Assembly (NCBI GenBank): GCA_965637545.1
Contig: OZ281500.1
Span: forward strand, 20,646,001 to 20,710,000
Origin: Phallusia mammillata
Lineage: Eukaryota
Reading direction: 5' to 3'
DNA: 64,000 bases
Shown: piece after piece, positions 21,425 to 51,665 of the stretch
Position numbering within the stretch: the first letter of the stretch is position 1
Layout: each line of letters opens with the position of its first letter
The notes under the pieces: generated by a model
Database searches by the model: none
Told to the model about the DNA's origin: nothing
What the model saw: the letters and a program-made list of their open reading frames with translations, nothing else
Translations under genes and position numbers: made by a program

Positions 21425-24400
21425 TTAGGGCACCATATTCTCAACAAGGGTTTTACATATTGGGCACTTTTGAGAGCTTTCGCGACAACCGTCACAACTG
21501 GCAAGGTGATGACACGGCAGGAGCATCACCGAAGCTTCCTTCAGTAAGCAAACTTTGCACTGTCGTTCATACTGTAACTGCTGAAGCTCAAATTCGACAG
21601 TGGTGTTCACTGGTATTGTGTTGTCTTCCTCTAGTCGACTGATGGTGTCGCTTTCAACGTGGGTCTCATTCTCTTTTAAACACTCGTCAACCAACTGAAC
21701 TGTGCTGTTAACAGTGGCGTTGTTTTTGCGGCATCTGTAATTATAATTTTTGAATTAATTTTTCTACACCAGGTAAATTTGTAGGACCGGGGAAAAATGG
21801 TATACAAACACTATTTTACTTAAAATCAACAACATGTCAAGCAGGCCAGTAAATTAACCGAACTTGTTGTAATATCAGTTTGACAATGCAATTTTGGAAG
21901 CCGCAATACACAACATGAATGGCCGAGGTGACCAATTTTACCGTGTCAGAGCTTTGCGAATGGTGGCATTCTCAAACCCCAAGTCTTTAACAGCTGCGAC
22001 AATTTCGGATTCTTGTATTTCTTTTTCGATGCTTTCTGCCAGCAGCCGTTCCTCTTCCCTTTGGCACGCTTCTGCCCAGCTGCATAAAAAAAACGCATAA
22101 ATTATTCAAAGGTTTTCGTGCTTTTCGAGTCTTTAAATATCTCAACTCACTTGGTTCCGCAGATATCGTGTCCTTCTCCGTTGTTTACACGACTGACAAA
22201 TTCAGGACCTTGGCATTGTAACAGAAATTCGCAGCTAAAAATACAAGAACGGTTTCGTTAAGACAAGTACATAGCAACCATTTAAGACCCAAACAATCTA
22301 AAAGTAGAATGGGAAGTATGGGCTTCATAAAATGGCTTCCAAAATTTTAAACACTCTTTTTGGTACCATAACTAGTTAAACTAATTTGGATAGAATCAGA
22401 ACATGTTGGCTCATTCCGAAACCTTTTTATTCTGGCTATACCATGCACTGAGGGATGTGTGGCTTATAAATTAACCTGAAGCATATTTACATTTCGACGA
22501 TCCCTATTGACATACCGGGTAATTTCCAATGACAAGCGACCATACTTAACTATTGGCCATACAAGCACGAGACCAAATGAAGTGTTAACAGTTATCAAAG
22601 TTTTTGATTTACTTACTTTGGTGAATGTTTAGCGTGTTCGACCCACGGAACATCGTTACGTTCCCAGTTGTGAAAGCCTTTGTTGCAATACCAGCACTTC
22701 AAACGATCCCTTTCGCCTAAGATTTAAAAGAAACAAATATAAGAGTTGCTCTAAAACACTATTTTCATGTAGCAGTGTAGAAAAACAGAACTAAAAATGA
22801 TTTAGTTCGTAGCTTCTTACTGAGAAGCTTCTATTGATCGTGTTCGAGAAGAACAATTGGCCTTTTCTAACGACAATAAACTTTTATTGCTCTTTACAGA
22901 CACTTAAGATGCCTTTTTAGCGAAATATATTAGTTCTTTGTAAGATTGTCAACTGATCTTGTGTCTTACCAAGAAAGTATAATCCGGCCTGGGCTAGTTC
23001 CTGTGGAGTGGCGTTGATGTGATTAGGCCAATTAAACTTGAACGTTGCCAATCTCGTTCTTTCATCAGCCATGTGTGGATTTTTGGGTGAAGTGCAAGGA
23101 AACGCGTCAACACTTCCTCTTTCCCTATCTTGGTGTGCGCGCGCTGTTGAAAGCGAGTAGCGTGAATGTGCGAAAACTGGCGCATTGGAATGGTTCTTTT
23201 CCACAGCTCTCGTTGACTGTACAACTGACAGCGGAACGTTAAAAGATGGCGCCTGACTGAGGTGTACGGGACCTCGTTGCAGCAGTTCACCAGCGGTCAT
23301 CTTTCGAAGCAGCGGAGAAATGGACGGCTGTGAGCCACTGGTTTTTGGTTGAACAGTAACTGTAGGGGATGGTGTGGTGTCTGTGCACAAAGACATAGAA
23401 ACTGTGATTCACCGAACCCGCCTCAAAAGGAAACCGAATATTAAAAATTCCGGCCGAATCAGACCGAACCTAAAATCCCGTTCTTATGGATGTTTTCAAC
23501 TGAACCTTGTGTTGTTGATGCAAGTCAATTATGACACTCCAAAATCACTTTTACAATGTGTAAGCTTTACTTAACTTCTAATATTTTGCAGACAAGGTGG
23601 CTCGTATTTTTTAAACGCAACAACTATAGTTAGTTCATAATGTTTCATATTGGCGATATTTACGGTTTTGGTATAAATATCACACAACAAAAACAAATTA
23701 AAAACATCGGTTTCGGTCAAATTTTTTAAAAAATGCTGGGGCCGAAACCGAAACATGGGAAACGGCATATTCGGCCGAAATGTTTTGGATAGAAACATCA
23801 AACATGTGTGCACTAAATTTCCCCCATTGTTATCTAACCACCGACAGATGGTAGACGGGGCTAGTAGTTTCTTTTCAGTTTATCACACATTCGCTTACCT
23901 GTGGGTCGGTTAGCTCTGCCTGTATCAGCCGCAAACTGACACTGAATATCATGCCACGACTGCATTCTTTGTTTATCTACTGGTACCCGCATATCTTCCA
24001 CGGCATGACCGCAACTGTTAAATGTAAAACTCCTTTTACAAACATGCAAACATCCAGCACTAAAGCATTCTGCTATAGTTGTACTGTGTCGTTTAGTTCT
24101 GCCTTTTATTCACACAAACATGGCGTAACTATTGAGATATCGGTTGCCATGATTCAGAGCACGATGGCAACACCGAAAGGCTGTTCAATGAGTAACGGTT
24201 TCAAAAATAGTGACAGAAACCAAGTCAATTCACGTTCAAAAACTGACTCTTTAACGAGTCTTTGGAAACGCTCTGTGGAACAATATGGATTTTAGATACA
24301 ATTGTTTTCGACTTACCGATAGCATTTAATGCGGTCTCTGTATCCAGTGTAGTAAAACCCGTTTTGTGCCAATTCTTTGACACTGACAGTTGTTGCGGGA

Positions 24401-24622
24401 AGAAACTTTTGAAATGTAGCAACTCGATATGATTCAACTTCAACGTCTCCTGTAAAAGACAACAGAAAAATGTAAAATCTATAGTTTCGATATTTACACC
24501 CGAAGTGGTGCACAGGTTTAGAATTAATCTATTGTACCTGGAAATATGTAAGTAGTCTCTTGTCCTGGTGGATCATTAGCAAACCTCATCACTCGGCCGT
24601 CAGATGCAACTTGTAAAGCCAT
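21425..24622 (-). CDS. IAP-2: BIR-BIR-UBA-RING with shortened RING tail
   Basis: Exon 1 (24538-24622) MALQVASDGR...YIFPG; BIR1 ...[16 protein letters not shown]|CGH...WHDIQC; BIR2 ...AGLYFLG|ERDRLKCWYC...WVEHAKHSPN|C; UBA KDLGFENATIRKAL; RING CKVC...PCHH...CPIC, ending VENMVP*. Confidence 0.88.
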
Positions 24623-27087: not shown

Positions 27088-29341
27088 TTACACGATATAT
27101 GAAGCTATAGTTTCATCAACTCGACTTTTGCACATTGGACATGTAGTGACGTCAGCTCCACACCTTCGGCAACAAGCAATGTGACCACACGGAAGTAGGA
27201 CAACAGAAGCTTTCTCCTGGTGACATTTCTTGCATTGACGTTCTTCTTCCAGTCGGTAAAGTTGTTCTGCAACGGGACTAATTCTCGATGGGCCACTGGA
27301 GGCAGCAGAGGATGGGTTTAGTTGAGTAGCTGGCTCTTGGCCCTCTGGTGCCTCGTTGGGATGCGCCAATATGTCGTCTATTAGTTGTTCTGCCGTTGTT
27401 ATTTTACAATGTTCCCCGCGAAAGTTACTGCAAATGCAAAATTTTGAATTGACAGCAAATATGGTTTTCTGTATATCAAACCTGGTGTTTCACCACTGTA
27501 TACCTTTCTATGGCAAGGCGAATCTCCGGAAAACCGAAACCTATTTTCACTGCTTCTTTAACAAATTCGGATGAACTCATGAATTTATCCACTTTTTCCT
27601 TCAGCTTTCGTTGTTCCTCTCTAGGGTCGACGATTTGGACTCGACTTGAAGACGAACGCCTGTAAATACCATTAAAGATTAACCGTCTTCGACTGTACAA
27701 TGGTAGAGAAAAAATCCTTACTGTAGTCCAGAGACGGCCGGTTGCAATGTGGGTCCACTGCGTGGGGTTGGACGGTTTAAATTTGGATATTGGGCGACGA
27801 CGTTGTGTACGAATTCGACTCCTTTCTTTTGTAACAAATATTCACACCTAAAAAATGTTGGTATTTATGAGACTGAATATGTTCAAGAGAAAAAATGAAC
27901 TTACGAAGGAAACCACTTTGCGTGTTCAAACCACGGTTCGTCATTTGGGCGCCAGTTTTGCAGACCTCCATTACAGTACCAGCATTTAACTCTATCTGAT
28001 GATCCTGCACAAAAATACACATTGTCATTCCAATTTCGTTTGCACCTTACTACATTGTTGTAAGCAAGTGGTGAAAACAAGACGTTGGGTAAAATACAAT
28101 ACCTAAATAGTAGAGTCCGGCCTCGGCGAACTGTTGAAAACTTGCATTGATTCGGTCTGAGGGCCAGTTGTGACGATTTCCTGTAAACGTGCTCAGTCGG
28201 TCGCTTTCCCTCTTCATGTGACTGTTTACGGGGTCGAGACAGGGAAATAGAGACTCTCGCGCACTGTTAGTGGAGGTCTCGTTGTTTCTCGAAGCCGCTG
28301 GGTCGTCCCGTGAGCGTTCTACAGCACGTGTAGAAGCTACAACACTTGGGGGAGGTGTAGGAAGTGCAGGCTGTGGGGAAGATACTCTGGCAGTTTGTAT
28401 GTGTGCCCGATTGGGTCCATGCATCAAAGCAAGTCCTGCTGGTATTCTGTGTTCCTCATTTTCACTGTGGCGCTGCCTTGTTGCTAATGTTGGCGATAAA
28501 CTTGAGTGACCTGAGCAGATTTAGAATATATAAATTCTTCTGTTTGTATGTTATACATCAGTTTTTTAATACATACATATGGGAATATTTCTAGGCTCCC
28601 TGCCTGAGAGGAACTCACAATCATCATTATGCCAGTTTTGTGATGAAGGGTCGTCATTTAGCGTCCAGTCTTGAACGCTTCCTCCACAGCTAAGAAAGAA
28701 TGTTAAGTAAAAGCACGAGTAATAGTCTTACAAAGGCGGGAAATAACGGCTAAATAGGAGGAAGGCGCTACGCAACATTCATTTACTAAATGAAACACAA
28801 TACAACAGGAAAGAGAAGTGAAACACCGCACAGTTTACTGCACACAACGAAACTAAGTAACTAGTTGATAAAGTTTAAACGCGTAACAGTTCTTTAAGGC
28901 GATAAGATCCATATTATCCCTAATATATGGAAGTTTACGGATATTAAATGTATGAAACTTAAACCACCTAAACGAATTTGCAATTTTGGCCTATATTCAA
29001 GCTATGCATAACATACCTGAAGCATTTTACTCGGTCTTTGTAACCAGTGTAGTAAAATCCGTGAAGAGCGAGTACTCGTGGGTCGACAGGGGAGTAGTTT
29101 GGAAACTTTGCAAAAGTGCCAAGTCGATATGTTTCCCGCTCTGTGTCACCTGCACAAAACATGCCAATTTAGTTATTCTACACTTTGCATTCCTGCCCAA
29201 CTTTCAGTTACTAAGAAGAATAATGCCTAGCCTACCATGCTGCAAAGTACGAAACTTACCTGGTAAAATGTACGAACTACGTTGTCCTGGTGGGTCCCTG
29301 CCAGGCAAAACTGACCTACCATCAAACTCAAGCATTGCCAT
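27088..29341 (-). CDS. IAP-3: BIR-BIR-UBA-RING (8 exons, intact)
   Basis: Exon 1 (29260-29341) MAMLEFDGR...; BIR1 [14 protein letters not shown]|CGGSVQDW...WHNDDC; BIR2 AGLYYLG|[33 protein letters not shown]|CEYL; UBA KIGFGFPEIRLAIER; RING CKKC...CGH...CPMC...SYIV*. All splice phases are compatible. Confidence 0.92.
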
Positions 29342-32004: not shown

Positions 32005-33925
32005 TGACCGTAAGCGCCGCTGTTTGGCAATTTAGTTCGCTTTGTCCAATACTCTAGGTGGCTCCAAAGGTCATCTTGGCCGAATGGTCTGGCGCGCCTG
32101 ACCCATATACATACATAAAAAAAAACTTGATCGGGATTCGTCCCCGGGAGTGTCCTGGGTTCGAACCCCGTGAAAAAAATATATATATAAGATGTGTAGT
32201 TCGGCATTGCGCTGATTGTTTGTGTGATGTTAAACAATAGTTTGCTGATATAAAGCCGGTAATAAAACAAATCTCGTTCCTGTATTATTCGGTTTATCCT
32301 TAGTGAAGTTAAGGTATATAGGATTCATTTACACAAAAAATATTTTTGTAATATAATACCAAACTTACACTTAAATTAAAAAATTAGTTATTGCAACTAC
32401 AGTAATTCCCAATAAAATACTCGAAAACAGTTTCACTGCATACTTCGTTTTTCAAAGTGAGAAAGTGGGAAAATGTTCACACCCAACTGTTACTGGGCAC
32501 ACGTGAAGATTTCACATTTCTAACACAACTTAACTCTGGAAAAGTTTTACCAAACGCGCTATCTTTAACTAAATAAAGTAAGCTTAACCAACCCAAACCA
32601 CCATTGTAGCGGGATCACCGCCCCTAACTTGGTAAACACCAGGTCACCCTGCACTAACGGCTTAGCGCTGAAGCCAAAGTTGATATGGTCACACCGAACA
32701 GGGCCTAAACTAAAACACCTTTAACAAATATGCAAATACAATAACGCTGGATTAAGGCAGAGCGACTTTCAAGTTTTCAATACATCACAACAGAATACAA
32801 CGCTAACACGTTTTTCAACCCCACTCAGAACACTGTGAACAACACGATGCCCAAGCGAGAACTGCCTCAAATCTAACACAAAGCATGCAGCGTTGCCGAA
32901 TTGTTTCGGCAGGCCTGATAAATCGTTCTTATACACCAAGCCTGCATACCTAATTCGTAACTCCCGCACACTGGTTTAGCTTGTGGGCGCTGATTATATT
33001 TAAAACAATGTAAAATCAGAACGTTACACCAAGCACGTGGCAACCCACCACCAATACTGGACACCAACACCAACACGTTTCACGGCGCCCAAAGAAAAAG
33101 CCATATCGTCGACTAGCGACGCTCTTCACATTCCAACGCAATCAACGCTTTACAAACCAATCACCCCTAAGGGAAAGCAGCAAAGGTGTCATACCAACTA
33201 AACGTAACTAAGGTGCCACAACGAAGAAGAATGAAAACAATAAGTGACGGTGACAAAACCACCAAGCCGCTACCACTTTTTTCAACCGCACTGATCTTGG
33301 CGGCCATTTACAATGTGCAAGCACGACACGTCGACGCCCAAATCATTGGTGCGAGACAGCAGTTGACTAGGCAAGCGCATGTAGCGGTACATGAGAACGT
33401 GTCATCACAAAAAATGAAATTCAAATACAAACAAATGTAAAGTTAAATATAGACAAAAGTGTGCGTGTAATAACAATAGTAAATAATATTATGTGAAAAC
33501 AGGTTACATATAAACAAAGAGTGTGAGAAATCAATAGAAATACAACCGTAAAAAAATAAATCGAGGAACCTTTGAAAACATTAACTATTACAAGTGCATA
33601 GATAAGACGAAGTAGATTTAATAACCAAAAGGAAACTAAATAAATAACAGTGATGTTGTGCAATAAAACAAAGAGATTAGCATTGTGTGTACGCGCTCAT
33701 TACAAAAGAAACAATAGTTCCAAACAAGTTATTACCAGCGCAACGTTTTTAAGGCAAACTCTAGCAAGACGGATTCGAGACTCCAAAAAAGTCGCTGGAG
33801 TCAAGTCTTGGTATTGTAATGGTGGTCTTCAGAATTGGGACAGAAATGATGATCCATGGTTTGAACACGCGAAATGGTTTCCAAAGGTTTCCCAACCTTA
33901 ACCGACCAACATCATTTAATGTAAC
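32005..33925 (+). pseudogene. IAP-5-like relic: promoter and intron remnants plus fused BIR fragment
   Basis: Segments resemble 39076-39300 and 40636-40690. 33800-33920 reads [29 protein letters not shown] (first Zn Cys changed to Ser), directly followed by FPNLNRPT in another frame. No BIR1 or RING exons found. Confidence 0.75.
32069..32172 (+). other. tRNA-derived (Pol III A/B-box) element, possible SINE head or tRNA pseudogene
   Basis: A-box-like TGGCCGAATGG (32077) and B-box GGGTTCGAACCCC (32157); related copies at 36791-36848 (partial) and 38958-39060 (inverted). Confidence 0.5.
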
Positions 33926-34231
33926 CATTGTGCAACAATGAGAAGATTTTCGGCATGTGTTCGAATGCAAAGAGCAGATCATAAAGTGTAATTTGTCGAT
34001 CTTTGTCGTCACCTAGCGATTTTCTCAATGACAGTTTGTTTATCACGTAAAAGCTGGTCACGCTGGATTGTATTGGGTAAACCTTTGTACATGGAATAGT
34101 GCTAAGCCCGAATCACAGTGATGTTATAGCAAAACTTGACATGTGTAAAAAGTTACGATTTGATAAATATGCTGCCGTAGCCATTAATCAATTTCTTAAG
34201 TATAAAATAGTATTTTGCTCATTCCATTAAT

Positions 34232-36623
34232 TCAGAACAAGCAAAATATTGTTTCTTCAACAGGACTTTTGCACAATGGACAGGTAGTGACGTCAGCTCC
34301 ACACCTTGGACAACACACAATGTGACCACACGGAAGTAGGACATCAGAAGCTCTTTCCTGGTGACATTTCTTGCATTGACGTTCTTCTTCCAGTCGTTGA
34401 AGTTGTTCTGCAACGGGACTGATTTTCGAGGAGCCGCTGGAGGCAGAAGAGGGTGGGTTTAGTTGATTCCCGGGATCTTGGACCTCTGTTTTGTTGGGGT
34501 GCGCCAATATGTCGTCTGTAAGTTGTGCTAAAGTTGTTATCTGACAATGTTCGCCGTTAAAGTTTCTGAAAAATAAAAAGTGTTTGACATTATTATCTTT
34601 TGGTTTGCAAGCGACTTTCTGTATTACATACCTTAGAATAGCGAGCCGAATGTCCGCAAAACTGAAACCCATTTCAGATGCTTCCTTTGCAAGCTTGGAT
34701 GAACTTAGAAACTGATCAACTTTTTCCTTAAGCTTTCGTTGTTGCTCTCTAGGGTCAAAGATTTCGACTGCACCTCCTAAGTCGTTTTCAGATGACAGGT
34801 GCCTACAAAAAACGGTTTGTTAGCAGTTCGGTCCGCGCAATAATATTCAGCCAACGTCCTTACTGAGGTCCACAGACAACTTCATGCGTGGGTCGACGTC
34901 TTTCCCTCTGCATGTGACTGTTGACAGGGTCGAGACCAGGGAACAACGACTCGCGCGCACCGCTAGTGGAAGTCTCGTTGTAGTTAAAAAACGACGGTTC
35001 GTGGAAAAACGCGCGAGGTGATAAAGCTACATCACTTTGTGGAGGAAAAGAAACAGAGAGTTGTGGAGCAGATACTCCAGCGAACGACAAACGTTGTTGA
35101 CCTGCGTAGATATAGGAGATATAAGCTACTGTTCGTAAGTAACGCAAACAGTTTTGATTATAGTTACTTACGTAATGGAATATTTCTAGGCTCCCTGCCT
35201 GAGAAGAATTCACAGTCATCATTATGCCAGTTTTGTGATGACGGGTTGTCATTTAGAGTCCAGTCCTGTACACTTTCTCCACAGCTAAGAAACAAAGGTA
35301 ATCAAAACACGAGAAATAAAATAACTTCAAAAAATAACGCTATAATATGAACAAATAGCTACACAAAATGCGGGCAAATAAGTTTTAAATAATTAAATTA
35401 TTAATAAACTCATTAGATCGACGGGAATCCTGAAACACTAATGGGTAATGAGATTAAAGCGCAAAAAATAGATAGTCCTTAAAACTAAAGTTTTGAGTGA
35501 CAAACGAAATTCAGCTGCAGCAGTCGCTGTCCAAAGTTAAATAATCCAGTTTTAAACTTCAACAGTTTGGAAGAATGATATTTGCAGGTGATTGAAGGCC
35601 TTCAACCAAGGTACACAAACACACCCAAAGCATTTTACTCGATCTTTGTATCCAGTGTAGTAAAATCCGTGAAAATCCAGTGCTCGTCGTTGTTTACACA
35701 ATAAAATGCGACATGCGTAAACACAATGCGACAGGAAACAGAAGTGAAATACCGTGAAGTTTATCAACAAGAACTAAACTTACTAATTAACTAACTTAGT
35801 CCTGTATGTTAAAACGCGTAACTTAACAGTCTTTAAAGGCGACAAGATATAAAAGTTTTTGAATCTACCTTGGTTTCAGAATACTAAATGTTTAAAACTT
35901 AAACCACCTAAATCGTACAAAAAATACATTTGCAACTTTGGCCCTTAATCAAATTGCACAACGTACCTAAAGCATTTTACTCGGTCTTGGTATCCTGTGT
36001 AGTAAAATCCGTCAAGAGCGAGTGCTCGTGGGTCGACGGGGGCGTAGTTAGGAAACTTTGCAAAAGTGCCAAGTCGATACGTTTCCTGCTCTGTGTCACC
36101 TGGACAAAAACATATCGGCTATTAGTTACTCTACAAATATTGTTTATGAAAACTGACATAACATCATACTCAGTGGTAGGATTCAATTTTTTTTGTCATG
36201 CTAACCGGTTCCCTGATTTCATAAATTTCGTGAGACGATTCTATGAAACCGGTGCAAACCGTCTGAATCCCACCACTGATCATACTCTATGTCCAGCATT
36301 ACTATGAATACTACCAAATATATCTTATTTAGCAAAATATTAATATATACTCTAATCAATGTGTTAATGAAATCGAAAACAACATGCTAACGCTAAACTG
36401 ACGTATATGTGTAGTAGTTTATGCGTTTTTTAAGCATAAAAAAGCATGCAAATTCATTAGTGCAAAAACAAAAATCGTTTTACAGTTATATTGTCGTCCA
36501 TGTTTGTCAACATTTAATGGTTTTTGTTGTGAGGTTTTTTCCTGGCGGAATATAAGCACTGTGTTCACTTGGTGGGTCTCCTCCACATCCAACAACCCTA
36601 CCATTTACTTCGATATTCACCAT
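34232..36623 (-). CDS. IAP-4: BIR1-UBA-RING, second BIR deleted in frame; exon-1 donor mutated (possible pseudogene)
   Basis: Exon 1 (36542-36623) MVNIEVNGR...YIPPG is followed by GA instead of GT. BIR1 exons at ~35967-36100 and ~35170-35285 are intact. The linker reads NSHMQRE-RRRPTHEVVCGPQ| directly into the UBA exon. RING ends IFCLF*. Confidence 0.7.
36171..36278. mobile_element. hAT-type MITE in IAP-4 intron 1
   Basis: TIRs CAGTGGTAGGATTCA / TGAATCCCACCACTG; perfect 8-bp TSD atcatact. Confidence 0.88.
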
Positions 36624-36790: not shown

Positions 36791-36848
36791 AAAAAAACCT
36801 GATGGGGATTCGTCCCCGGGAGTGTCCTGAGTTCGAACTCCGTGAAAA
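36791..36848 (+). other. Partial tRNA-like element (3' half with B-box) in the IAP-4 promoter
   Basis: GGGGATTCGTCCCCGGGAGTGTCCTGAGTTCGAACTCCGTGAAAA, nearly identical to 32130-32176. Confidence 0.5.
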
Positions 36849-37540
36849 TAGGGAAAGGTCACGTGCTGTTTCAAAAGAACCGCGATACCGTGGGAAAAAT
36901 TGTGCCGGGAGGTATGGTTGTGTGGTGTGGTATGATTGGGTTGTCGCTTGCAAACTATCTTTTATGCATTGGCTGCAGCTACAATAACAACTTGTTAATT
37001 AAATCAAAATAAAATTATATACAACTAAAATACATGTGTCAAACTTGATTTGAAGGTTTTTTTTCCAACTAAAGAAATTATGCTGTGTATGAATTCATAG
37101 GGCAACATTATACAGCACAAAAGCGTGTTCGTTTCTCTTTCTATTCTCTTTCGGTGACTGACGTAAAACGTTTGCCTGGAAATGCTGCACACGATACGTT
37201 GTCTGCATTGGTAAATATTTTGAGCGTTTGTTAAAACTACTTGTCTATGCCAGTGGTAAATATTTAAGCGTTTAAAGGTTTGTTGCTGGTTGACCGCATA
37301 GGATGAAATCATAAGAGCCAACATTACGTCATGCAGGGATTACAAACTTCAATGTTGCAAATAGTTCGAGTCGAAGAAAACGTTTGAATTTAAATGTGTA
37401 ATCAATAAAATAAAATATGGTCAGCATTAAACGACGAGAACTGTATATGTAACATAAACAATTGTTCTAAATGAAAAATATAACATACGACAAAAAAGAA
37501 AATATGGGTTAAGATATATAAACAAGCATACTCAGTAGAC

Positions 37541-37787
37541 CAGTGGTCGGCAACCGCCGGTCCGCGGCCCGGTACCGGTCCGCGAGGAGTTCGTTACCGG
37601 GCCGTATAATTTTTCAGGTTAAATGCTATACAACATTGTTTCCATGTATCCCGGGGATGATAAACTATGTCGCAACCGCTACAAACTAATTTAAGCGTTT
37701 TTATTGCTAAATATTTGTAGTTTTTTTGAAGACCGGTCCGCGATAAAATTTCACGGTCCGCAGTGCCATAAAGGTTGCCGACCCCTG
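37541..37787. mobile_element. Buster/Charlie-type hAT MITE
   Basis: TIRs CAGTGGTCGGCAACC / GGTTGCCGACCCCTG; perfect TSD cagtagac; empty paralogous site at 50245-50252. Confidence 0.9.
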
Positions 37788-37983: not shown

Positions 37984-38590
37984 CTAGGTTTTCATTTCAG
38001 GTCTATTTAAGTTTGGAAACTTGGCAACAATATTGTAGACGAATTGTGGGCCCCTGCGTTGCAACAGGAATTCACACCTATTAAAAGATTTAGGTTCTTT
38101 TTATTTACAGGAAAATGTTTAAAAGGGACTTACGTTGGAAACAATTTGGCATGTTCACTCCATGGATCATCGTTCTTATGCCAGTTCTGCAAACAACCGT
38201 TGCGGTACCAACATTTTAACCGATCCGGTTCACCTGGTTTAGGAAAAAGTCCCTAAATAACTTTTCCGGTTCACCTGGTTTAGGAAGAAATCCCTAAATA
38301 ACTTTTGTTGGTGCTAGATCAAACTTAGGAACACTATACACGGACTTGAAAATTAATTTAATCATGAACATGTTGTAAATAATACTGGGGTGAAAACAGA
38401 AAATGCAAACGGTTTCGTGAAGTAATTGCGCCAATATCACAAACAGTGTGTCGCGAATAAACCTTGCGCAGAGGTGGGTGGATTGCCTTCTTTACGAGTT
38501 AGTTCTTGTGTTCCAGGTTGATTCTCAACAGACTGCGTCTCCCGTGGGCCGTGACCAGACGAAGAAACAGGTGATAGACGTAGTTGTGCG
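37984..38590 (-). pseudogene. Relic of the 3' half of IAP-7
   Basis: Paralogous to 50452-51130. The BIR N-half exon is deleted, WYC is changed to WYR (Zn ligand lost), a ~39-bp tandem duplication crosses the acceptor (38225-38305), and the same ...T-stop (ACC TAG) is retained. Confidence 0.8.
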
Positions 38591-39060: not shown

Positions 39061-39913
39061 CACCAATTCAAAACCTGACCGTAAGCGCCGCAATTTGGCA
39101 ATGTAGCTCGCTTTGGCTAATACTTTAGGTGGCGCCAAAGGTCAACAATTTAAACCCTTCCTTATATGGTGGGTGTATTTCGACACTGTGCTGAATGTTT
39201 GTGGAATGTTGAACAATAGCTCATGGATATAAAGCCCGTATTAAAACAAATCCCGCTCTTCGTTTACTCGATCCTTCGAAAAATGTGAAGTTGAGGTGTA
39301 GGATTTAATCACACATACACTATTTTTGCAGTTTCTTATCAAACTCGAAAAAGTTAAACCGTCTTTTACCAATAGTACATGGATTCCCCGCGGACATAGT
39401 TCAATAGTATCCACTGCCCCAAACTTTTAGTAAACGAATGCTGCACAAATGCAGAAAATCAGATTAAGGTGATAGCATATTAGCTCTACTTTCCCAACTT
39501 TTCAATTTACTATAAACTACACTACTTTTCCAGGAAACAAATCACACTTATCAAGTTCGATTCCACACAGGAAAACAAACGGCCTTCATAAGCGGATGTA
39601 ATACGTTGCTTTGTATTAAGTTTAAGAAATCGAAATCGTAAAAAAACCTTCAGCAATGTAACACCGACAACGCGAACATCGTTGTTACTTTTGGACATCG
39701 CGTCAGATATTGCGCAACAAGCCGGGTAAACACTGCCCGCGCGCCATTGTTGCGAAACTCTTTTATGTTGCCATCCCCTTTGTGTCCTTTTGCCGGCAAT
39801 GAATATAAAAGCAAACCAACAATTTAATCAATTTATTGCTCATGCCGGTTTGGTGATATAAAGCGGTGTTTGAAGCTTAACCCTTAAATCAAATGACGCC
39901 GAAAACGTGCAAT

Positions 39914-42020
39914 ATGTCGGACATTGAGGTAGATGGCAGAATTTTAAATTCGACCAGAGAACCGCCAGGTCAGCACAGCGTTTATATTCCACCGGGTAAG
40001 TTATGTTGTGCAGTAAACAGTTGAAGTTTGTAAGCATATATTGTTCTATTTCAGTTGAAAGAAATCGCGAAGTTCACAGACTGGCGACTTTTGCACGTTT
40101 TCCGCAGTTTGCACCAGTCAACCCATGTGCACTTGCAAGAAATGGATTTTATTTTACCGGTTACAAGGACCGAGTAAAATGTTTCAGGTTTGTGGGGATG
40201 GTTAAATGTACGATTTACTTTTTTCAAGCTTATTTAAATTCGTATTTTACAGTTGCGGCCAAACAGTTGACTCTTGGGCGATTGGCGACGACCCAACGTC
40301 TTTAAGGTGGCATGATCGTGATTGTCCGTTTGCAACAGGAAATGATACCGAAAACGTTGCAATTGAAAGTAAGTTTTTCTACATAGTCAACATTTAACAT
40401 GTAAGTTTAGCCTTATAAAACCGTACACAAATTACTCAAGTATAGAGCGACAGATGATAAGCGCCAATTGAAACGTTTATTTACGTAACAGAAACATTAA
40501 TTTCGCCTATTTGGAAACCATCGTCAGTTTTCATCTTATTCAAATGGAATGATAAGAAATAATACTGATGTTAAAAAGGTAACCTGATATCTCTTGCACA
40601 AGCACACAGAAATGTTCACATTCCAAAAAGGTTGCTTACACCGGACAGTTGCTGTCCACACATGAAGATTTCACAATGCTAACAAAACTTTTGAAATCTG
40701 CACAGGGTTTCACACGAGACATGTTGGAAATTCCACGCCGCCACAAACTTTAAGAATTCCAAACAGGTTAACACCAGCGGCTGCAACGTCTTCAAGGGAA
40801 ACTCCAATAAGACGGAGTCGAGATTCCGATGAAGACACCGAAGTCGCACGTTACGAAACAATTTTCACCTGCCCGGACCCCACAAATCCCCACATGCGAG
40901 ATGAAGCTCGTCGGTTGCAAACGTTTGTTGATAATCTGAGAAATTGGCCTTCACACAGAATCGCAGCAACCCCCGATCAAATGACCAAGGCTGGACTTTA
41001 TTATCTCGGTAAGTGTGACTGAATAGTATCAATTCGCCAGTTGCTGTTTCCAAATTGTATCCGAATTTATTTACAAATCTCATAAAGGTTGGTTTATAAT
41101 TTAGCTTGTCATTTTTAGGCCAGAGGGATCGAGTAAAGTGTTGGTATTGTAATGGAGGTCTGCAGAATTGGGACAGGAATGATGATCCATGGTTTGAACA
41201 CGCGAAATGGTTTCCAAGGTAGGATTTCACTATAAGCTGACACACGAAATTCTTTAACATTTTTTTTATAATTTTCATAGTTGCGAGTTTTTGCTTCAAA
41301 AGAAAGGACCAGCTTATGTTCACAACGTTGTGGCCCAGTTTCCCAATCTCAACCGACCAACACCAGTTAATGCTGCCAACAGACAGAATTTGCCACAAGT
41401 TGCATCCGGTTTGCAGAGGTCAAGATCAAACATGCCAATTATTGTTGATCCGAGAGAAGAAGTGAGAAAAAGGGAAAGAAAAGTTGATGAAGAAATGCGA
41501 AGATCGCCTCTTGTGGCCAAAGCAAAGGGGATGGGATTCAGTGAAAAAGAAATTCGCTGCGCATTGTTAAGGTAAATAAAATAATAATTTACAAACAATT
41601 TTTTTTGGTGTTCAACACCAATATAAACATCTACCGTTAAGAAAAAGTCATTCTTTTTTTTCTAATTGATATAGGAAGCATGAAGAAAGCGAAGAGTTTT
41701 GTTCGAATCTTGAAAGTTTCGTTGAATGCATTCTATCGAATCCGGATCCGATTCCAGAAGATCGTGATCTAACTTTGGATGCTGGAGGTTCAACAAACTT
41801 GGAAGGCGAAGTAAATAGAGGAGGAGACCAGCAAACGATCAAGGAACTTGACCGATTACAAGCATCAAGGACATGTCGGATTTGTCGGACATCTCAGGCA
41901 AATATTGTGTTACTTCCGTGCGGTCATATCGCCTGTTGTGAAGGGTGCAGTAAGGGATTGAAAAAATGCCCTGTTTGCAAAAGTTTTGTGCGTGAAACTG
42001 TGAAATCGTACATTGTGTGA
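39914..42020 (+). CDS. IAP-5: BIR-BIR-UBA-RING (7 exons, intact, opposite strand to the other intact IAPs)
   Basis: Exons 39914-39995, 40055-40187, 40253-40368, 40706-41008, 41119-41218, 41281-41570 and 41675-42020 join in frame. All Zn ligands are present; ends SYIV*; TATAAAG at 39857. Confidence 0.93.
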
Positions 42021-45700: not shown

Positions 45701-48700
45701 GCTTCACGCACAAGGGAATTACAAATAGGGCAGTGGCGTAAATCTTTTGAGCAGTTAGCGCATGTTGCTAGATGACCGCAGGGAAGTAGCACAACTGAGG
45801 CATTGGATCTTTCACACACTTTACAAGATCTAAGTTTTTTAAGATTATGTAGCTCTTGCGCGACTGACGTTTCGCCGCTTGCTGAGGAACTAGAGGCGGT
45901 TGGAATTTCTGACAATGAGGCCTGATTTGATGTGGGAATTTGGCCTTGATTTTCCAACATGTAATTCACCATACTTTCGAAACTGGGATATGGGGCGTCA
46001 GCTTCTTCAAACCTCCTGCAAGAAATAAAATGAAAAAATTTAAACACCAAAAAATAATTCTATATGAAAACAGACAAATTCTTAAAACGTTACCAAATGT
46101 TTTGTCGATAAACCTTTTCACCAAAACAAAAGCCAAGGAAAATCTCCAGCTAGAATTGGTTTTTCATTTCTTAACATTGGTGCTTTATTTAGATATTTAC
46201 CTCAACATTGCAAAACGAATTTCCGTTTCGCTAAAACCCATGGTCTTGGCTTCTTCCACAAATGACGATCTTCGCATCTCTTCATCAACTTTTCTTTCCC
46301 GTTTTCTTACTTCTTCTCTCGGATCAACAATGATTGGCATGTTTGATCTTGACCTCTGCAAACCGGATGCAACTTGTGGCAGATTGAGAGCACTTGCACT
46401 ATTAACTGGTGTTGGTCGGTTGAGGTTGGGAAATTGGGCCACAACGTTGTGGACATAAGCTGGTCCTTTCTTTTGAAGTAAAAACTCGCAACTGAAAAAA
46501 TTAAAATAAATTAAATTGATGAAGAATTTTGTGTGTCAGCTTATAGTGAAATCTTACCTTGGAAACCATTTTGCGTGTTCAAACCATGGATCATCATTCC
46601 TGTCCCAATTCTGAAGACCTCCATTGCAATACCAACACTTGACTCGATCCCTCTCGCCTAAAAATGACAAACAATGATATCAAATTTTCCAAAGATAATT
46701 CAGTTTTGATTAAGATGCTTCGCAAAATTAGACAGGAATTGGGGCCCAAACCCCGAAACCCAGCCCGAAGATGATTGTTTTAAAAAAGCAAGGTCTTAAA
46801 AATACCCGAAAGTTGGTAAAAATGCGGCAAAAATGAGTGTAAAATCAGGCCCAAAAAGCCCAACTTACAACTTTAAACCGTAAGCCACTTACCAAGATAA
46901 TAAAGTCCAGCGTCGACCATTTGTTCGGGTGTTGCTGCGATTCGGTGTGAAGGCCAATTTCTCAGATTATCGACAAACGTTTGTAACCTGTGTGCTCTGT
47001 TCCTCATGTGGGGGTTTACCGGATCAGCGCAGGGGAAAAGGTTCTCGGTTTCGTCAACTTCCCTTGGTCGTTCTATTGATCTAGGTCTGACCCTTTGTGC
47101 TGACGTCGAGGAAGTCGAGACTGCTGGGTTTAAATCGCGTCTAACTTCGTGACTTCTACTTTGCCGATTTTCTGTTGTTGTTGTTTCTCGTGTCTGACGT
47201 AGTGGGTTTCCACCTAATCAGGAAGTAATATAATGAAAGGAAATGATTCATTTGCGTACGAACGCGGGGAAATCTTGGGCGAAATCAGTCAATCAGATTT
47301 CGGTTCATTCATATGCAAACTCAAGATAATATTGGGACGGCACCAGTTTTGTATCGATATGAAACTTCGTTACACCACCACCAATAGTATAGATGTCTTG
47401 TTGCTTTCGGTGCTGGTGTAGAACTGAAACTGCTGCTAATGAACTGCTGCTAGGCGTACTTACTGTTATTTACCCTAATATGGTGACCTGTATACGACGT
47501 CGAACCGTCGGTATAAAAATACAATTGCTGAAGGGGCTTTTTAAATTTGATATTATGCCTGGAACCAACAGCTTATATAGAAGTAGTTTAGTACCTAGCA
47601 TTTCCAAGCAATTCTCCACACGTGAATGCCACAGAATATGTTACGCGTAAATGCCTATGTTGGTCAGGTCACATGACATGAATAGCGAGACAGATATAGA
47701 CATATATATATACGGTTAGTAGATATTGACGTCATATACAGGCGGGGCAATAGCTCCGTTAAGCCTTTATATTTAAAGCTTTTTCACCTGCCCTTGTTTG
47801 TCTTACGTTTAATCACGTGCAAATGCTCATAAAAGTCTTATTTGGGTTTTTTAACTTACCAATCGGAACGTTGTCGGTGCTCTCGCCTGCAATTAGCTGA
47901 CAGTCTTCGGCGTGCCATCTTTCCCATGTTGGGTCATCGCCAACAACCCAGTTTTCCACAGTCAAACCACACCTACAAATAAATGACAAGTTACATATAA
48001 GATGAACTTAATTCATAACTGGGATCAGCCCTGAAGCGTTCATGCAGACCATGTTGCACATAAGGCTTAAAGTCATTAAATGCCAATCCAGGCGAAACAC
48101 AATAGCTTTGAAAGGAACGCCCACGTTCAACCATTTGTTATTTTGACAACCGATATAATTAGTCCAAAGCAAGTGGGTTAAATTTAAATGTGGGCGAGAC
48201 GATACGCAACGTCGCATACAGGTCATTGGGGAAATGAACTAACTTACTGAAAGCATTTCACACGGTCCTTGTATCCGGTGTAGAAAAATCCATGCTTGGC
48301 AAGTGCACACGGGTTTACAGGGGAAAACTCCGGAAATTTCGCAAATGTGGTGAGTCGATAAATTTCTCGAAATGTGTCACCTTAAAACAATCAAAAAGGA
48401 TTACATTGCATTTCCTATGACGAATATTGTTCTTGAATGGACACGAGTCAAAGTTCAAAAAATACGTTTGTGCTGCGTCATGTTTTGCTGACGACACCCA
48501 AACTCAAGATGACGCAAGGGTTTGCCAACTAAGCGCTCGACGCACTACATTATGTGTGTCACGTTCACAATTTCCCAATTATTTATGCAACAAACAACAT
48601 CAACACAGTGGGTAAAAAGTTAAATTGGTCATTTCAGGATATCAGTCTAGAACACGTTCTTTAGGAATATTATAATAAACAGAATATCAAAAATGTGTCG

Positions 48701-49514
48701 ATTTACGGTTTAGAATTCTCTAACGTTTAAATGACTATACACAACAAATCAAAGTTATATGCGGCCTTAAAGAACAAGCCAGAAACCCGGCCCTAGCACG
48801 ATTTTTTGAAAGCAAGTAATTAGACCCGAAAGTTTAATTACTCAGCGTTAAAATACAATATGACGGAAAAGTTAGGCCCGAACTAAGATTGTTTCTTTTT
48901 GACTAAAGTCCGAACCGAAGCCCCATACAACCTTACATCAAATGACAAAAACATACAAACTAATACACATGTCAAAAAACAAAGTTATCGGAACGTCATA
49001 CTTTACACATTATGTATACATATGTATTGGCATGTCTGTTTCTCATGAAATTATTACTAATTAAAACAGTTGGGTAAAAAACGATAACAGAAGCTTAAAA
49101 CATGCGACGACAAACATGACGCCAATTCAAACAAGAGAACATTGTACCTGATGAAATGCATTAAAATGTGATGGCACAAGTCAAAACTCCGTTTAAAGTG
49201 TTCAACTCCAATTACGTGTTTCAATCAATCGTAACAAAATAAAACATCACACTGCAGAAAACAATTACAACTGTTGTAAACGGAGTAGTGCCAACGTGAA
49301 CACATGTAGAATAAAATCTTTTGCCTCTATACTTTAAATTTAGTTTTAACTTGTTCTTTTTATGAAAAAAGCTTTAATACTTGGTTTGGCGATCATGTTC
49401 GTCGACATAATATATTAAGTTGTATTATTTACCTGGCGGAATATAAGCACTGCGTTGACCTGGTGGGTCGCGTCCGCTTTCTACAACCCTACCATCAACT
49501 TCGATATTCAACAT
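45679..49514 (-). CDS. IAP-6: BIR-BIR-UBA-RING (7 exons, intact)
   Basis: Exon 1 (49433-49514) MLNIEVDGR...YIPPG; BIR1 exons ~48253-48385 and ~47860-47975; linker/BIR2 ~46895-47215 and ~46560-46660; UBA exon ~46203-46492; RING CKVC...CGH...CPIC...SFIV*. Confidence 0.92.
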
Positions 49515-50451: not shown

Positions 50452-51665
50452 CTAGGTTCTTGGTTCAGGCCTATTTAAGTTTGGAAACTTGGCAACAATA
50501 TTGTGGACGAATTGTGGGCCTTTGTGTTGCAACAGGAATTCACACCTATTAAAAGATCTGGGTAATTTTTATTCAGGGGAAAGTGTTTAAAATGAACTTA
50601 CGTTGGAAACCATTTGGCATGTTCACTCCATGGATCATCATTCCTATGCCAGTTCTGCAAACCACCGTTGCAGTACCAACATTTTACCCGATCTCTTTCA
50701 CCTGTTTACGTTTAAAAATACATAAATCACGTTTGTTGGTGCTAGAGTCAAACTTACCAAGGTAAAATAGTCCAGCCTCTGCCATCTGCTTTGGAGTTGC
50801 TCGAATCCTGTGTGAAGGCCAGTTGTGGTGATTTTTAATGAAGGTTTGCTCACGGGATTTTACATCCCGCATTGCCGGATTTCGAGGTTCCAAACAAGGA
50901 AAAAGATTCCCAGAATCGCGGGAGCTGTGGGGAACTGGGATGAAAATAGAAAATGGACACAGTTTCGTTAGGAATTGCGCCAATATCACAAAAGATGTGG
51001 CGCAAATAAACCTCGCGCAGAGGCGGGTTGATTGCCATCTTCACGAGTCAGTTCTTGTGCTCCAGGTTGTATTTCAACAGACTGCGTGGGAAGTCTCCCA
51101 TGATCAGTGGGTGAAGAAGCAGGTATTGGACGTAATTGGCGAAATAATGCGTCTGAAAAAGATTTAAAAAGCAAGCAAGCTAGACACACCAAGTATGGTA
51201 ATTTAAACGTCGTACTTAGCGGTACGTTAGTTTCATCAACTCCATTTGCAAAGTCGCAATCATTTTGGTGCCAGCGTCGATCTGCTGGGTTGTCGCTTGC
51301 AATCCAATCCTGTACGCATTGGCCGCAGCTAAAATCACAACTTGTATAGTAAATGAAAATAAATGTGTACAACTGTAAACTGCACCTGAAACATTTGACT
51401 CTGTCCTTGTAACCAGTGTAATAAAATCCGTTTTCTGCCAACTGATATGGATTTTGTACATTGCTTCTAGAAAACTTCAAAAACGTTGAAACTCGGTATG
51501 ATTCGCGTTCCTTGTTTCCTGCTCGAATATGAGGTTTAAAATGTTATTTCGGACATTCTGTCTAATATAACTTGTTGAACCTGGTGGTATGTAGAAGCTC
51601 TTTTGACCTGGCGCATCACTACCAAGCGAAATATTACGACCATCTGTTACAATTTGGTCGTCCAT
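50452..51665 (-). CDS. IAP-7: BIR-BIR only (no UBA, no RING)
   Basis: [10 protein letters not shown]...YIPPG|[13 protein letters not shown]...[15 protein letters not shown]|CGQCVQDW...WHQNDC|linker with an extra 77-nt intron (50935-51011)|...AGLFYLG|[17 protein letters not shown]...EHAKWFPT|[30 protein letters not shown]. Confidence 0.85.

What the first reader, a model, noticed from the sequence alone, without database searches (positions are those of the whole stretch)
39914..39995. Conserved N-terminal exon in six IAPs carries a caspase-type xxxD-G site: possible cleavage switch
Seen: an 82-85 nt first exon encodes a peptide outside the BIR fold that is conserved while the inter-BIR linkers are not. 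IAP-2 VASD-GR..DPPGQ..YIFPG; IAP-3 LEFD-GR..DPPGQ..YILPG; IAP-5 IEVD-GR..EPPGQ..YIPPG; IAP-6 IEVD-GR..DPPGQ..YIPPG; IAP-7 IVTD-GR..DAPGQ..YIPPG. The damaged IAP-4 has IEVN-GR. Known: initiator caspases prefer (I/L)ExD with a small P1' residue, and Drosophila DIAP1 is regulated by caspase removal of a short N-terminal peptide. Inference: an analogous, possibly undescribed, caspase-controlled N-terminal module.
Basis: partly seen in the sequence, partly recalled or inferred. Interest (0 to 1): 0.72.

Follow-up and report, generated by a model that had tools for sequence, protein, structure and literature searches.

The report
Sea-squirt IAP head module with caspase-type site
Six neighbouring cell-death-inhibitor (IAP) genes of the sea squirt Phallusia mammillata start with a short exon for a conserved peptide in front of their first BIR domain. 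The peptide occurs in IAPs from all three sea-squirt orders, and it begins with a nearly invariant Asp-Gly pair that looks like a caspase cutting site, although no cutting has been shown.

Summary
All six copies of the 82-85-nt exon exist at the stated places, with conserved phase-1 donors. IAP-5's exon 1 is spliced as predicted in RNA-like contigs, and IAP-2's matches a deposited Phallusia mammillata protein.

A profile of the six copies finds it in front of the first BIR of IAPs from Phallusia, Ciona, Clavelina and Styela. It also occurs in Endozoicomonas IAPs and in intronless IAPs carried by retroelement-like metagenome contigs.

- **Consensus:** Φ-(E/V)-x-D-G-R-Φ-Φ-x3-R-D-P-P-G-Q-x-S-V-Y-I-x-P-G-D.
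- **Conservation:** Asp-Gly is kept in 55 of 57 untruncated named ascidian proteins. What lies upstream varies from 4 to 532 residues and is not conserved.
- **Structure:** two AlphaFold models put the Asp at the border between a disordered leader and an ordered segment. That segment's best structural match is the autoinhibited DIAP1 BIR1.
- **Prior description:** the module matches no solved chain, gets no Pfam family of its own, and its core motif appears in no searched paper.

The caspase-switch reading is therefore partly supported: the sequence logic holds in orthologues, but cleavage is untested. A purely structural Asp-Gly remains a serious rival.

I rate it a new variant of a known kind (caspase-cleavable IAP leaders in insects), of moderate interest.

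The parts
39914..39995 (+). IAP-5 exon 1: Met1 to Pro27 plus the first base of a split codon. It encodes the leader (MSD), the IEVD-G site and the EPPGQ..YIPP module.
   Evidence: Sequence. The splice 39995/40055 is seen in contigs of three runs, and those contigs start at 39897-39899.
39932..39937 (+). Codons GAT GGC for Asp7-Gly8 of IAP-5, the proposed scissile bond (P1-P1').
   Evidence: Sequence. Column statistics give Asp 77/82 and Gly 80/82.
40055..40187 (+). IAP-5 exon 2, first half of BIR1. The split codon G+TT gives Val where relatives have an invariant Gly.
40253..40368 (+). IAP-5 exon 3, second half of BIR1, with the unusual zinc-ligand spacing C-x2-C-x18-H-x3-C.
40706..42020 (+). 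IAP-5 exons 4-7 (40706-41008, 41119-41218, 41281-41571, 41675-42020): linker, BIR2, UBA-like region and RING. The protein has 456 residues in total.
   Evidence: The gene model translates without a stop. All joints are present in the spliced contig.
24538..24622 (-). IAP-2 exon 1 (VASD-G).
   Evidence: It matches the N-terminus of P0003 = CAB3225570.1.
29260..29341 (-). IAP-3 exon 1 (LEFD-G).
   Evidence: It is 94% identical to the N-terminus of P0004.
36542..36623 (-). IAP-4 exon 1 relic: IEVN-G, PPSE in place of PPGQ, and a donor changed from GT to GA.
49433..49514 (-). IAP-6 exon 1 (IEVD-G).
51581..51665 (-). IAP-7 exon 1 (IVTD-G, DAPGQ).
24317..24449 (-). IAP-2 exon 2 (133 nt, start of BIR1). 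The equivalent exons are IAP-3 29017-29149, IAP-4 35967-36099, IAP-6 48248-48380 and IAP-7 51386-51518, all on the minus strand.

Best explanation
The exon encodes a tunicate-wide head module that always sits directly in front of the first, atypical BIR domain of IAPs.

Shown:
- The module has a fixed layout. A leader of variable length and sequence comes first, then Φ-(E/V)-x-D-G-R-Φ-Φ, three variable residues, then R-D-P-P-G-Q-x-S-V-Y-I-x-P-G-D, which runs into BIR helix 1.
- It is as conserved as the BIR domains themselves.

Predicted: the part from the Gly onward is ordered and packs on BIR1. Everything up to the Asp is disordered.

Inferred: a caspase with (I/V/L)ExD-type preference cuts after the Asp. 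Ciona has a caspase-8/10-like enzyme and an IETD-fmk-sensitive step in tail regression. Cutting would remove the leader, which is 4-30 residues in most two-BIR forms and a 160-530-residue head in three-BIR forms. It would leave Gly-Arg-Φ-Φ as a new N-terminus already lying along the BIR1 peptide groove.

The consequence is open. It could switch BIR1's binding competence, as the Asp20 cut does in DIAP1, or mark the protein through a Gly N-degron.
For: 1. Asp-Gly is near-invariant across deep paralogues and all three ascidian orders, with P4 aliphatic, P3 mostly Glu or Val and P2 free.
2. The leader upstream is unconserved (identity 0.11) and ranges from 4 to 532 residues, as expected if only its removal matters.
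3. Two independent AlphaFold models were made, of Phallusia P0004 and Ciona P0048. In P0004 every residue before the Gly has pLDDT below 50. In P0048 residues 10-27 fall below 50 and the 21-30 block averages 48. Confidence then rises through the module (block means 62 and 76 in P0004, 74 and 86 in P0048) to above 90 at the BIR. A short strand starts one residue after the Gly.
4. In both models the best structural match is autoinhibited DIAP1 BIR1 (3siq; Z 13.3 and 13.2). The alignment starts at the P1' Gly opposite DIAP1 residue 2. In DIAP1 that N-terminal sequence occupies the BIR1 groove until the caspase cut at Asp20 (PMC3972657).
5. By my count of a DIAP1 sequence recalled from memory (not from a tool), the Asp lies 26 residues before the conserved Glu of BIR helix 1, against 24 in DIAP1.
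6. The pseudogenised IAP-4 has lost the Asp, the GQ and the splice donor together.
7. Ciona has a caspase-8/10-like initiator, and Z-IETD-fmk delays tail regression (PMC10923776).
8. Caspase cuts that expose Gly feed the ZYG11B/ZER1 Gly N-degron pathway (PMC7458402).
Against: - There is no biochemical evidence of cleavage in any tunicate IAP.
- Asp-Gly is also a favoured turn or capping pair, so its invariance could be structural.
- The strongest conservation (DPPGQ, Y-I-x-P-G) lies outside the site and needs another explanation.
- In many intronless copies only 4-7 residues precede the Asp, which is little to remove.
- P3 is Val in a quarter of sequences.
- About 6-12% of sequences have Glu, Ala, Pro or Ser at P1.
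- One Endozoicomonas ascidiicola copy keeps the rest of the module without Asp-Gly.
- The start of the structural alignment at the Gly partly reflects trimming of low-confidence residues, and I could not inspect model coordinates.
- IAP-5 itself replaces the otherwise invariant Gly-Asp after YIPP with Val-Glu.
Confidence: 0.45

Rival explanations
1. The module is a purely structural extension of BIR1. It is a folded flap on the atypical first BIR. The Asp caps or salt-bridges the start of the flap and the Gly provides backbone freedom. No protease is involved.
For: The most invariant residues (D-P-P-G-Q, S, Y-I-x-P-G-D) lie in the part predicted to pack on BIR1 at pLDDT 76-94. The module always travels with one BIR subtype, the one with W-H-x3-C spacing. 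Asp-Gly is retained even in retroelement copies with a 4-residue leader. Glu replaces Asp conservatively in 10 unnamed sequences.
Against: Neither model builds a strand before the Asp-Gly, which argues against a hairpin with Asp-Gly at the turn. In P0004 the Asp itself has pLDDT below 50; for P0048 the tool gives no per-residue value for it. A structural cap would not explain the aliphatic P4 and acidic P3 preference combined with a free P2. Asn, the usual structural substitute for Asp before Gly, is seen only in the pseudogene.
Confidence: 0.33
2. The site acts as a bait or pseudosubstrate. Φ-E-x-D-G presents a substrate-like loop that engages the caspase active site while BIR1 docks on the enzyme. 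This would resemble the reactive-site cleavage of baculovirus p35 or the mechanism-based inhibition reported for DIAP2 (both from my own knowledge).
For: The site evidence is the same as for the main explanation. In addition, the site is tethered about 25 residues from a BIR domain, the geometry used by IAP-caspase complexes such as 1i3o and 3sip, which are among the structural matches.
Against: No solved inhibitory linker aligns with the module: the XIAP linker-BIR2 chains match only from the BIR helix onward. Nothing here tests enzyme binding.
Confidence: 0.1
3. The module is a docking motif for a partner. The invariant P-G-Q-x-S fits the TRAF-type PxQx(S/T) pattern (from my own knowledge). 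BIR1 is most similar in sequence to the TRAF2-binding BIR1 of cIAP1/2, so the module could recruit a TRAF or another adaptor.
For: P, G, Q and S are near-invariant (83/84, 83/84, 83/84 and 74/84). The best single-BIR sequence matches of BIR1 are cIAP2 and cIAP1 BIR1, including the TRAF2 complex 3m0a.
Against: The segment is predicted folded against BIR1 rather than free. The pattern match is short and recalled, not tested. This reading does not explain the Asp-Gly.
Confidence: 0.08

Closest known systems
DIAP1 and other insect IAPs: N-terminal leader removed by caspase cleavage after Asp20 (PMC3972657 and the Tenev 2007, Li 2011 and Ditzel 2003 papers cited there)
   Same: A caspase-type Asp site sits about 25 residues upstream of BIR1 helix 1 (the DIAP1 figure is my count of a sequence recalled from memory). 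A segment N-terminal of BIR1 lies in the place of the groove-bound peptide. The autoinhibited DIAP1 BIR1 (3siq) is the best structural match of both models.
   Different: There is no sequence similarity between the leaders or modules. In DIAP1 the removed leader is the groove ligand, whereas here the retained Gly-Arg-Φ-Φ is modelled there and the leader is disordered and variable. The new N-terminus is Gly, not Asn. A strongly conserved 17-residue DPPGQ..YIxPGD block has no insect counterpart.
XIAP linker-BIR2 element that blocks caspase-3/7 (1i3o, 1i4o, 1i51)
   Same: A conserved peptide immediately N-terminal of a BIR domain contains an Asp and is functionally tied to caspases.
   Different: The profile aligns to these chains only from the BIR helix onward. 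The XIAP linker binds in reverse orientation and is not cleaved (own knowledge). The ascidian site has forward substrate polarity.
IAP-binding motifs (N-terminal Ala-x-Pro/Ala-Φ tetrapeptides exposed by proteolysis)
   Same: A tetrapeptide with hydrophobic positions 3 and 4 would become N-terminal only after cleavage, and it is modelled as a short strand beside the BIR sheet.
   Different: Position 1 is Gly, not Ala. It would act in cis on its own BIR. Groove occupancy is inferred from superposition ranges, not seen in coordinates.
Host-derived IAPs of Endozoicomonadaceae (PMC11521996)
   Same: Endozoicomonas IAPs closest to ascidian IAPs are already published. I find that they carry the same head module.
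   Different: The paper does not describe the module. Two bacterial copies keep DIExD-G behind long N-terminal extensions, and one E. ascidiicola copy has lost Asp-Gly.

Membership tests
IAP family (BIR-containing proteins with RING) | At least one BIR domain, and a C-terminal RING in the ligase-type members | tested here: met
   Pfam finds BIR (2-3 stretches), zf-C3HC4_3 and, in some, UBA_BIRC2-3 in P0003, P0004, P0054 and others. The IAP-5 model shows BIR1, BIR2 and a RING.
DIAP1-type caspase-activated IAP leader | Caspase cleavage after an Asp N-terminal of BIR1 | not testable with these tools
   Only the site consensus could be scored: Asp 77/82, Gly 80/82, P4 Ile/Val/Leu/Thr 77/82.
DIAP1-type caspase-activated IAP leader | The removable leader itself occupies the BIR1 peptide groove before cleavage | tested here: not met
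   Most or all of the leader has pLDDT below 50 in both models, and it is unconserved. The segment aligned to DIAP1 residues 2 onward starts after the Asp.
DIAP1-type caspase-activated IAP leader | The neo-N-terminus is a destabilising Asn (Arg/N-degron route) | tested here: not met
   P1' is Gly in 80 of 82 sequences. A Gly N-degron is possible (PMC7458402) but is a different pathway.
DIAP1-type caspase-activated IAP leader | Sequence homology of the pre-BIR1 segment | tested here: not met
   The profile of module plus BIR1 aligns to DIAP1 chains (1sdz, 3sip, 3siq) only from profile position 36.
XIAP linker-BIR2 caspase-inhibitory element | Alignable linker preceding the BIR | tested here: not met
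   Chains 1i3o_E, 1i4o_C and 1i51_E match profile positions 37-110 only.
IAP-binding motif (IBM) | N-terminal Ala followed by x-(Pro/Ala)-hydrophobic | tested here: not met
   The would-be N-terminus is Gly-Arg-(Ile/Val/Leu)-(Tyr/Ile/Val/Leu). Only position 4 fits.
TRAF-binding PxQx(S/T) motif | Pattern present in an accessible, extended peptide | tested here: inconclusive
   The pattern P-G-Q-x-S is near-invariant, but the segment is modelled as packed on BIR1. Binding was not testable.

The most novel reading that the evidence does not exclude
The module is a cleavage-operated latch that works the opposite way to DIAP1. A caspase cut after the invariant Asp does not remove a groove ligand but creates one. 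It frees the alpha-amino group of a Gly-Arg-Φ-Φ peptide that is already held along the BIR1 groove by the DPPGQ..YIxPGD scaffold. Caspase activity would then switch BIR1 between open and self-capped states, or expose a Gly N-degron. In three-BIR IAPs the same cut would detach a 160-530-residue helical head. The switch would be specific to tunicates, which have lost caspase-9 and Apaf-1, and it has been copied by their bacterial symbionts and by a retroelement lineage.
Probability: 0.15. Interest if true: 0.8.

Novelty: new variant of a known kind. Interest (0 to 1): 0.55.

Why it matters
Tunicates are the closest invertebrate relatives of vertebrates. They have rebuilt their apoptosis machinery: caspase-9 and Apaf-1 are lost, and Ciona has 18 IAPs (PMC13159474).

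A module as conserved as the BIR domains themselves is present on dozens of paralogues per species. It is retained when IAPs are captured by symbiotic bacteria and by mobile elements. It is therefore likely to be central to how these IAPs are controlled.

It gives a concrete, cheap experiment: an Asp-to-Asn mutant, tagged IAPs in Ciona tail regression, and IETD-fmk. That experiment would test whether feedback cleavage of IAPs by caspases, so far established in insects, also operates in a chordate lineage through an independently evolved peptide.

Tried and rejected
- **Beta-hairpin with Asp-Gly at a type I' turn.** Rejected as the leading reading because neither AlphaFold model builds a strand before the Asp, and most or all of the leader has pLDDT below 50.
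- **Homology to the XIAP linker or the DIAP1 leader.** No solved chain aligns to the module.
- **Upstream in-frame ATG at 39893 as the true start of IAP-5.** Contigs of three runs begin at 39897-39899, just downstream of it. Contig ends are not true 5' ends, so a 7-residue longer leader cannot be excluded. This does not affect the site.
- **Trans-splice acceptor at the contig start.** There is no AG before 39897.
- **Post-cleavage N-myristoylation of the Gly.** Unlikely because Arg follows the Gly (own knowledge of the NMT consensus).
- **Looking up the contig of the uncultured-Endozoicomonas IAP by exact protein.** This failed. The locus was later reached through the genome scan.
- **Rfam and ORF scan of the high-depth patches at 36.8-37.8 kb.** Nothing was found.

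Limits:
- The spliced IAP-5 protein has no reference id, so I could not hand it to the search or folding tools. P0004 (close to IAP-3), P0003 (IAP-2) and Ciona P0048 (IEVD-G, like IAP-5) served as proxies.
Full report
**What is in the window.** The window carries a tandem array of IAP genes. A six-frame motif search and tblastn with a hand-built IAP-5 protein locate these features:

| Gene or fragment | Position | Notes |
|---|---|---|
| IAP-1 | about 18.6-19.95 kb (-) | one BIR plus RING, no head exon |
| IAP-2 | 21.4-24.6 kb (-) | |
| IAP-3 | 27.1-29.3 kb (-) | |
| IAP-4 | 34.2-36.6 kb (-) | damaged |
| IAP-5 | 39914-42020 (+) | |
| IAP-6 | 45.7-49.5 kb (-) | |
| IAP-7 | 50.5-51.7 kb (-) | |
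| BIR fragments | 33.8 and 38.0-38.2 kb | |

The organism is the ascidian Phallusia mammillata. The deposited protein CAB3225570.1 / A0A6F9D8D2 (P0003) maps exon by exon onto IAP-2 at 91-100% identity. This agrees with earlier scan note s1-382233.

- The six head exons are 82 or 85 nt. Each begins with ATG and ends in phase 1 at CCAG|GT. Each is followed by a 133-nt exon with AG/GT borders that opens BIR1.
- The quoted peptides are correct.
- IAP-4 has Asn for Asp, SE for GQ and GA for the GT donor, so it is a decaying copy.
- For IAP-5, all six introns I predicted are joined exactly in a 1377-nt contig of run X1 and in partial contigs of three further runs (X2, X3, X8). These are RNA-like runs holding about half or less of the genomic words.
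- The IAP-5 contigs start at 39897-39899, just after an upstream in-frame ATG at 39893. ATG 39914 is therefore the first start codon in the sequence recovered. Contig ends are not true 5' ends.
- One correction: the final Gly of 'YIPPG' is a split codon. After splicing it is Gly in five genes but Val in IAP-5, where 84 of 84 relatives have Gly.

**The module is tunicate-wide, not a local feature.** I ran a profile of the six peptides (A1) exhaustively against 1.84 billion representative proteins. It gave 75 hits at E<=1e-3. About a dozen multi-stretch hits are low-complexity noise. The rest are IAPs, or short ORFs that read from the exon into the intron as '...YIPPGK...'. The latter show that the intron position is conserved in other genomes.

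Named hits come from:
- Phallusia mammillata, Ciona intestinalis and C. savignyi (Phlebobranchia);
- Clavelina lepadiformis (Aplousobranchia);
- Styela clava (Stolidobranchia);
- Endozoicomonas.

A word-indexed search with nine full-length members found 365 proteins at E<=1e-10. Among the best 120 the same taxa recur, together with many unnamed metagenome proteins.

In every case the module directly precedes the first BIR. This includes three-BIR 'ZF(RING)-14' and XIAP-like proteins, in which 160-532 residues lie upstream. That upstream head is probably the about 165-residue helical domain of scan note s1-364025.

No named non-tunicate animal protein was hit. Pfam assigns nothing to the module. 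No solved chain aligns to it. The string DPPGQ occurs in none of the roughly 8.4 million searchable papers. A 2026 survey of metazoan IAPs that includes Ciona never uses a word beginning 'cleav'.

**Anatomy of the module.** Column counts come from 84 sequences that are less than 90% identical to each other (A3).

| Position | Residues |
|---|---|
| P4 | Ile 34, Val 27, Thr 12, Leu 4 |
| P3 | Glu 32, Val 21, Asp 8, Gln 7 |
| P2 | free (Ser, His, Thr, Ala, Cys...) |
| P1 | Asp 77 of 82 |
| P1' | Gly 80 of 82 |
| P2' | Arg 46 |
| P3', P4' | hydrophobic |
| next three | variable |
| then | Arg 68, Asp 81, Pro 80, Pro 83, Gly 83, Gln 83, x, Ser 74, Val 52, Tyr 83, Ile 78, x, Pro 79, Gly 84, Asp 64 |
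| after three more | the invariant Glu-x-Tyr-Arg of BIR helix 1 |

Among named ascidian proteins, Asp-Gly is kept in 55 of 57 that are not truncated gene models. Among unnamed ones the counts are DG 108, EG 10, AG 3 and neither 2. The leader before the Asp ranges from 4 to 532 residues.

Mean pairwise identity in nine diverse full-length proteins is 0.11 for the leader, 0.56 for the module, 0.46 for BIR1, 0.10 for the linker and 0.60 for BIR2.

**Structure predictions.** I folded Phallusia P0004:1-123 (LEFD-G) and Ciona P0048:1-143 (IEVD-G, like IAP-5) with family alignments. The mean pLDDT was 82 for both.
- In P0004, residues 1-12, up to and including the Asp, have pLDDT below 50. Confidence rises through the module (62, then 76) to above 90 in the BIR.
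- In P0048, residues 10-27 are below 50 and the 21-30 block averages 48. The blocks 31-40 and 41-50 average 74 and 86.
- A short strand starts one residue after the Gly in both models (residues 14-15 and 34-36). No strand precedes the Asp.
- In both models the top structural match is the autoinhibited DIAP1 BIR1, 3siq. For P0004: Z 13.3, rmsd 2.0, 91 residues. For P0048: Z 13.2, rmsd 2.4, 90 residues.
- Both alignments start at the P1' Gly opposite DIAP1 residue 2. BIR-only structures align only from the residue before helix 1.
- Because low-confidence residues were trimmed, the exact start is partly forced. Roughly 5-7 more residues align than for BIR-only DIAP1 chains.
- In DIAP1 the N-terminal sequence occupies the BIR1 groove until drICE cuts after Asp20 (PMC3972657). 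I infer, without coordinates, that Gly-Arg-Φ-Φ is modelled along the same groove. In the Ciona model the only strand-labelled partners long enough to pair with a three-residue strand are the BIR sheet strands.

**Interpretation.** The sequence logic of a caspase site is present and survives the orthologue test: aliphatic P4, acidic P3, free P2, invariant Asp, invariant small P1'. The site sits at an order/disorder border, downstream of an unconstrained leader. Ciona has a caspase-8/10-like initiator and an IETD-fmk-sensitive step in tail regression (PMC10923776). Tunicates lack caspase-9 and Apaf-1 (PMC13159474). A cut would expose Gly, a known N-degron class after caspase cleavage (PMC7458402).

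The analogy with DIAP1 is functional at best.
- The sequences are unrelated.
- The leader is not the modelled groove ligand.
- The new N-terminus differs.
- Most of the conservation lies in a DPPGQ..YIxPGD block that a cleavage site does not explain.

A purely structural Asp-Gly therefore remains a serious rival. I put cleavage at about 0.45, including a bait-type variant, and structural-only at about one third.

**Natural experiments.**
- Endozoicomonas IAPs derived from ascidian hosts are already published (PMC11521996). I find the module in three bacterial loci. Two keep DIEHD-G and DIEPD-G behind long N-terminal extensions. The E. ascidiicola copy reads LSAQVY where relatives have xxDGxxY, but keeps [15 protein letters not shown].
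- Intronless, module-bearing IAPs of 437-490 residues lie in metagenome contigs in a conserved same-strand order. That order is small BIR protein, IAP, dUTPase, an unknown protein of about 370 residues, a gag-like protein with a CCHC knuckle, RT-RNase H, then integrase.
- Two versions of this arrangement differ by 27-60% at the protein level yet keep the order.
- The element-specific protein has 32 clusters, none from a named organism.
- These captured IAPs keep Asp-Gly with leaders of only 4-10 residues. This fits either a structural role or a cut that is needed for activity.

**Verdict.** The module appears undescribed. As a mechanism it would be a new, independently evolved variant of the caspase-cleavable IAP leader known from insects.

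Noticed in passing
L001:1282-10530, L002, L004:4229-20275, L005, L006 (metagenome contigs): Intronless IAPs with the ascidian head module sit in a conserved same-strand gene order. The order is small BIR protein, IAP, dUTPase, an unknown ~370-aa protein, a gag-like protein with a CCHC knuckle, RT-RNase H and integrase. Two versions are only 40-73% identical at the protein level yet keep the order. This looks like a retroelement lineage of more than 20 kb that carries IAP genes. The element-specific protein has 32 clusters, all unnamed. No LTR was found within the 20.5 kb held, and no paper was found with a limited search. The host is unknown.
   Followed up: partly
L007:3001-3324, L008:3001-3348, L009:495-782: Endozoicomonas genomes encode IAPs with the ascidian head module. 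The host-to-symbiont transfer is already published (PMC11521996). Two loci keep DIExD-G inside ORFs of 732 and 1220 codons. The E. ascidiicola copy has lost Asp-Gly, and its locus has only 30% G+C against 46-49% for the other two.
   Followed up: partly
window 40253-40368 and the equivalent exon 3 of the other copies: The first BIR of this subfamily has zinc-ligand spacing C-x2-C-x18-H-x3-C, with Trp-His adjacent, instead of the canonical C-x2-C-x16-H-x6-C. W-H-x3-C is near-invariant in 84 sequences, and the region is modelled at pLDDT above 90.
   Followed up: partly
window 39995/40055: IAP-5, the copy at the finding's coordinates, is expressed. After splicing it has Val-Glu where 84 of 84 relatives have Gly and 64 of 84 have Asp (…YIPP-V-E…). 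Its module-BIR1 junction is therefore atypical.
   Followed up: partly
window 36794-36990 and 37385-37778: Contig depth in the RNA-like runs is 100-250 here, against 1-9 over IAP-5, with many loose ends on both sides. These are most likely dispersed repeats. There is no Rfam match and no convincing ORF.
   Followed up: partly
window 33800-33926 (+) and 37999-38234 (-): Stray BIR2-exon fragments lie here. The first is 96% identical at protein level to IAP-5 exon 5. They are debris of duplication or gene conversion within the array.
   Followed up: no
window 29017-29353 and 35173-36103: The deposited P. mammillata protein P0004 (CAB3267788.1) matches IAP-3 in exons 1-2 (94-98%). At 85% identity or more, its exon-3 part matches only the damaged IAP-4 (89%). 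It also has five extra N-terminal residues where the window has a stop codon. This suggests a mosaic or haplotype difference, or gene conversion, between IAP-3 and IAP-4.
   Followed up: no
window 21941-22236: IAP-2 has one more intron than IAP-5. The exon corresponding to IAP-5 exon 6 is split into 22153-22236 and 21941-22081.
   Followed up: no
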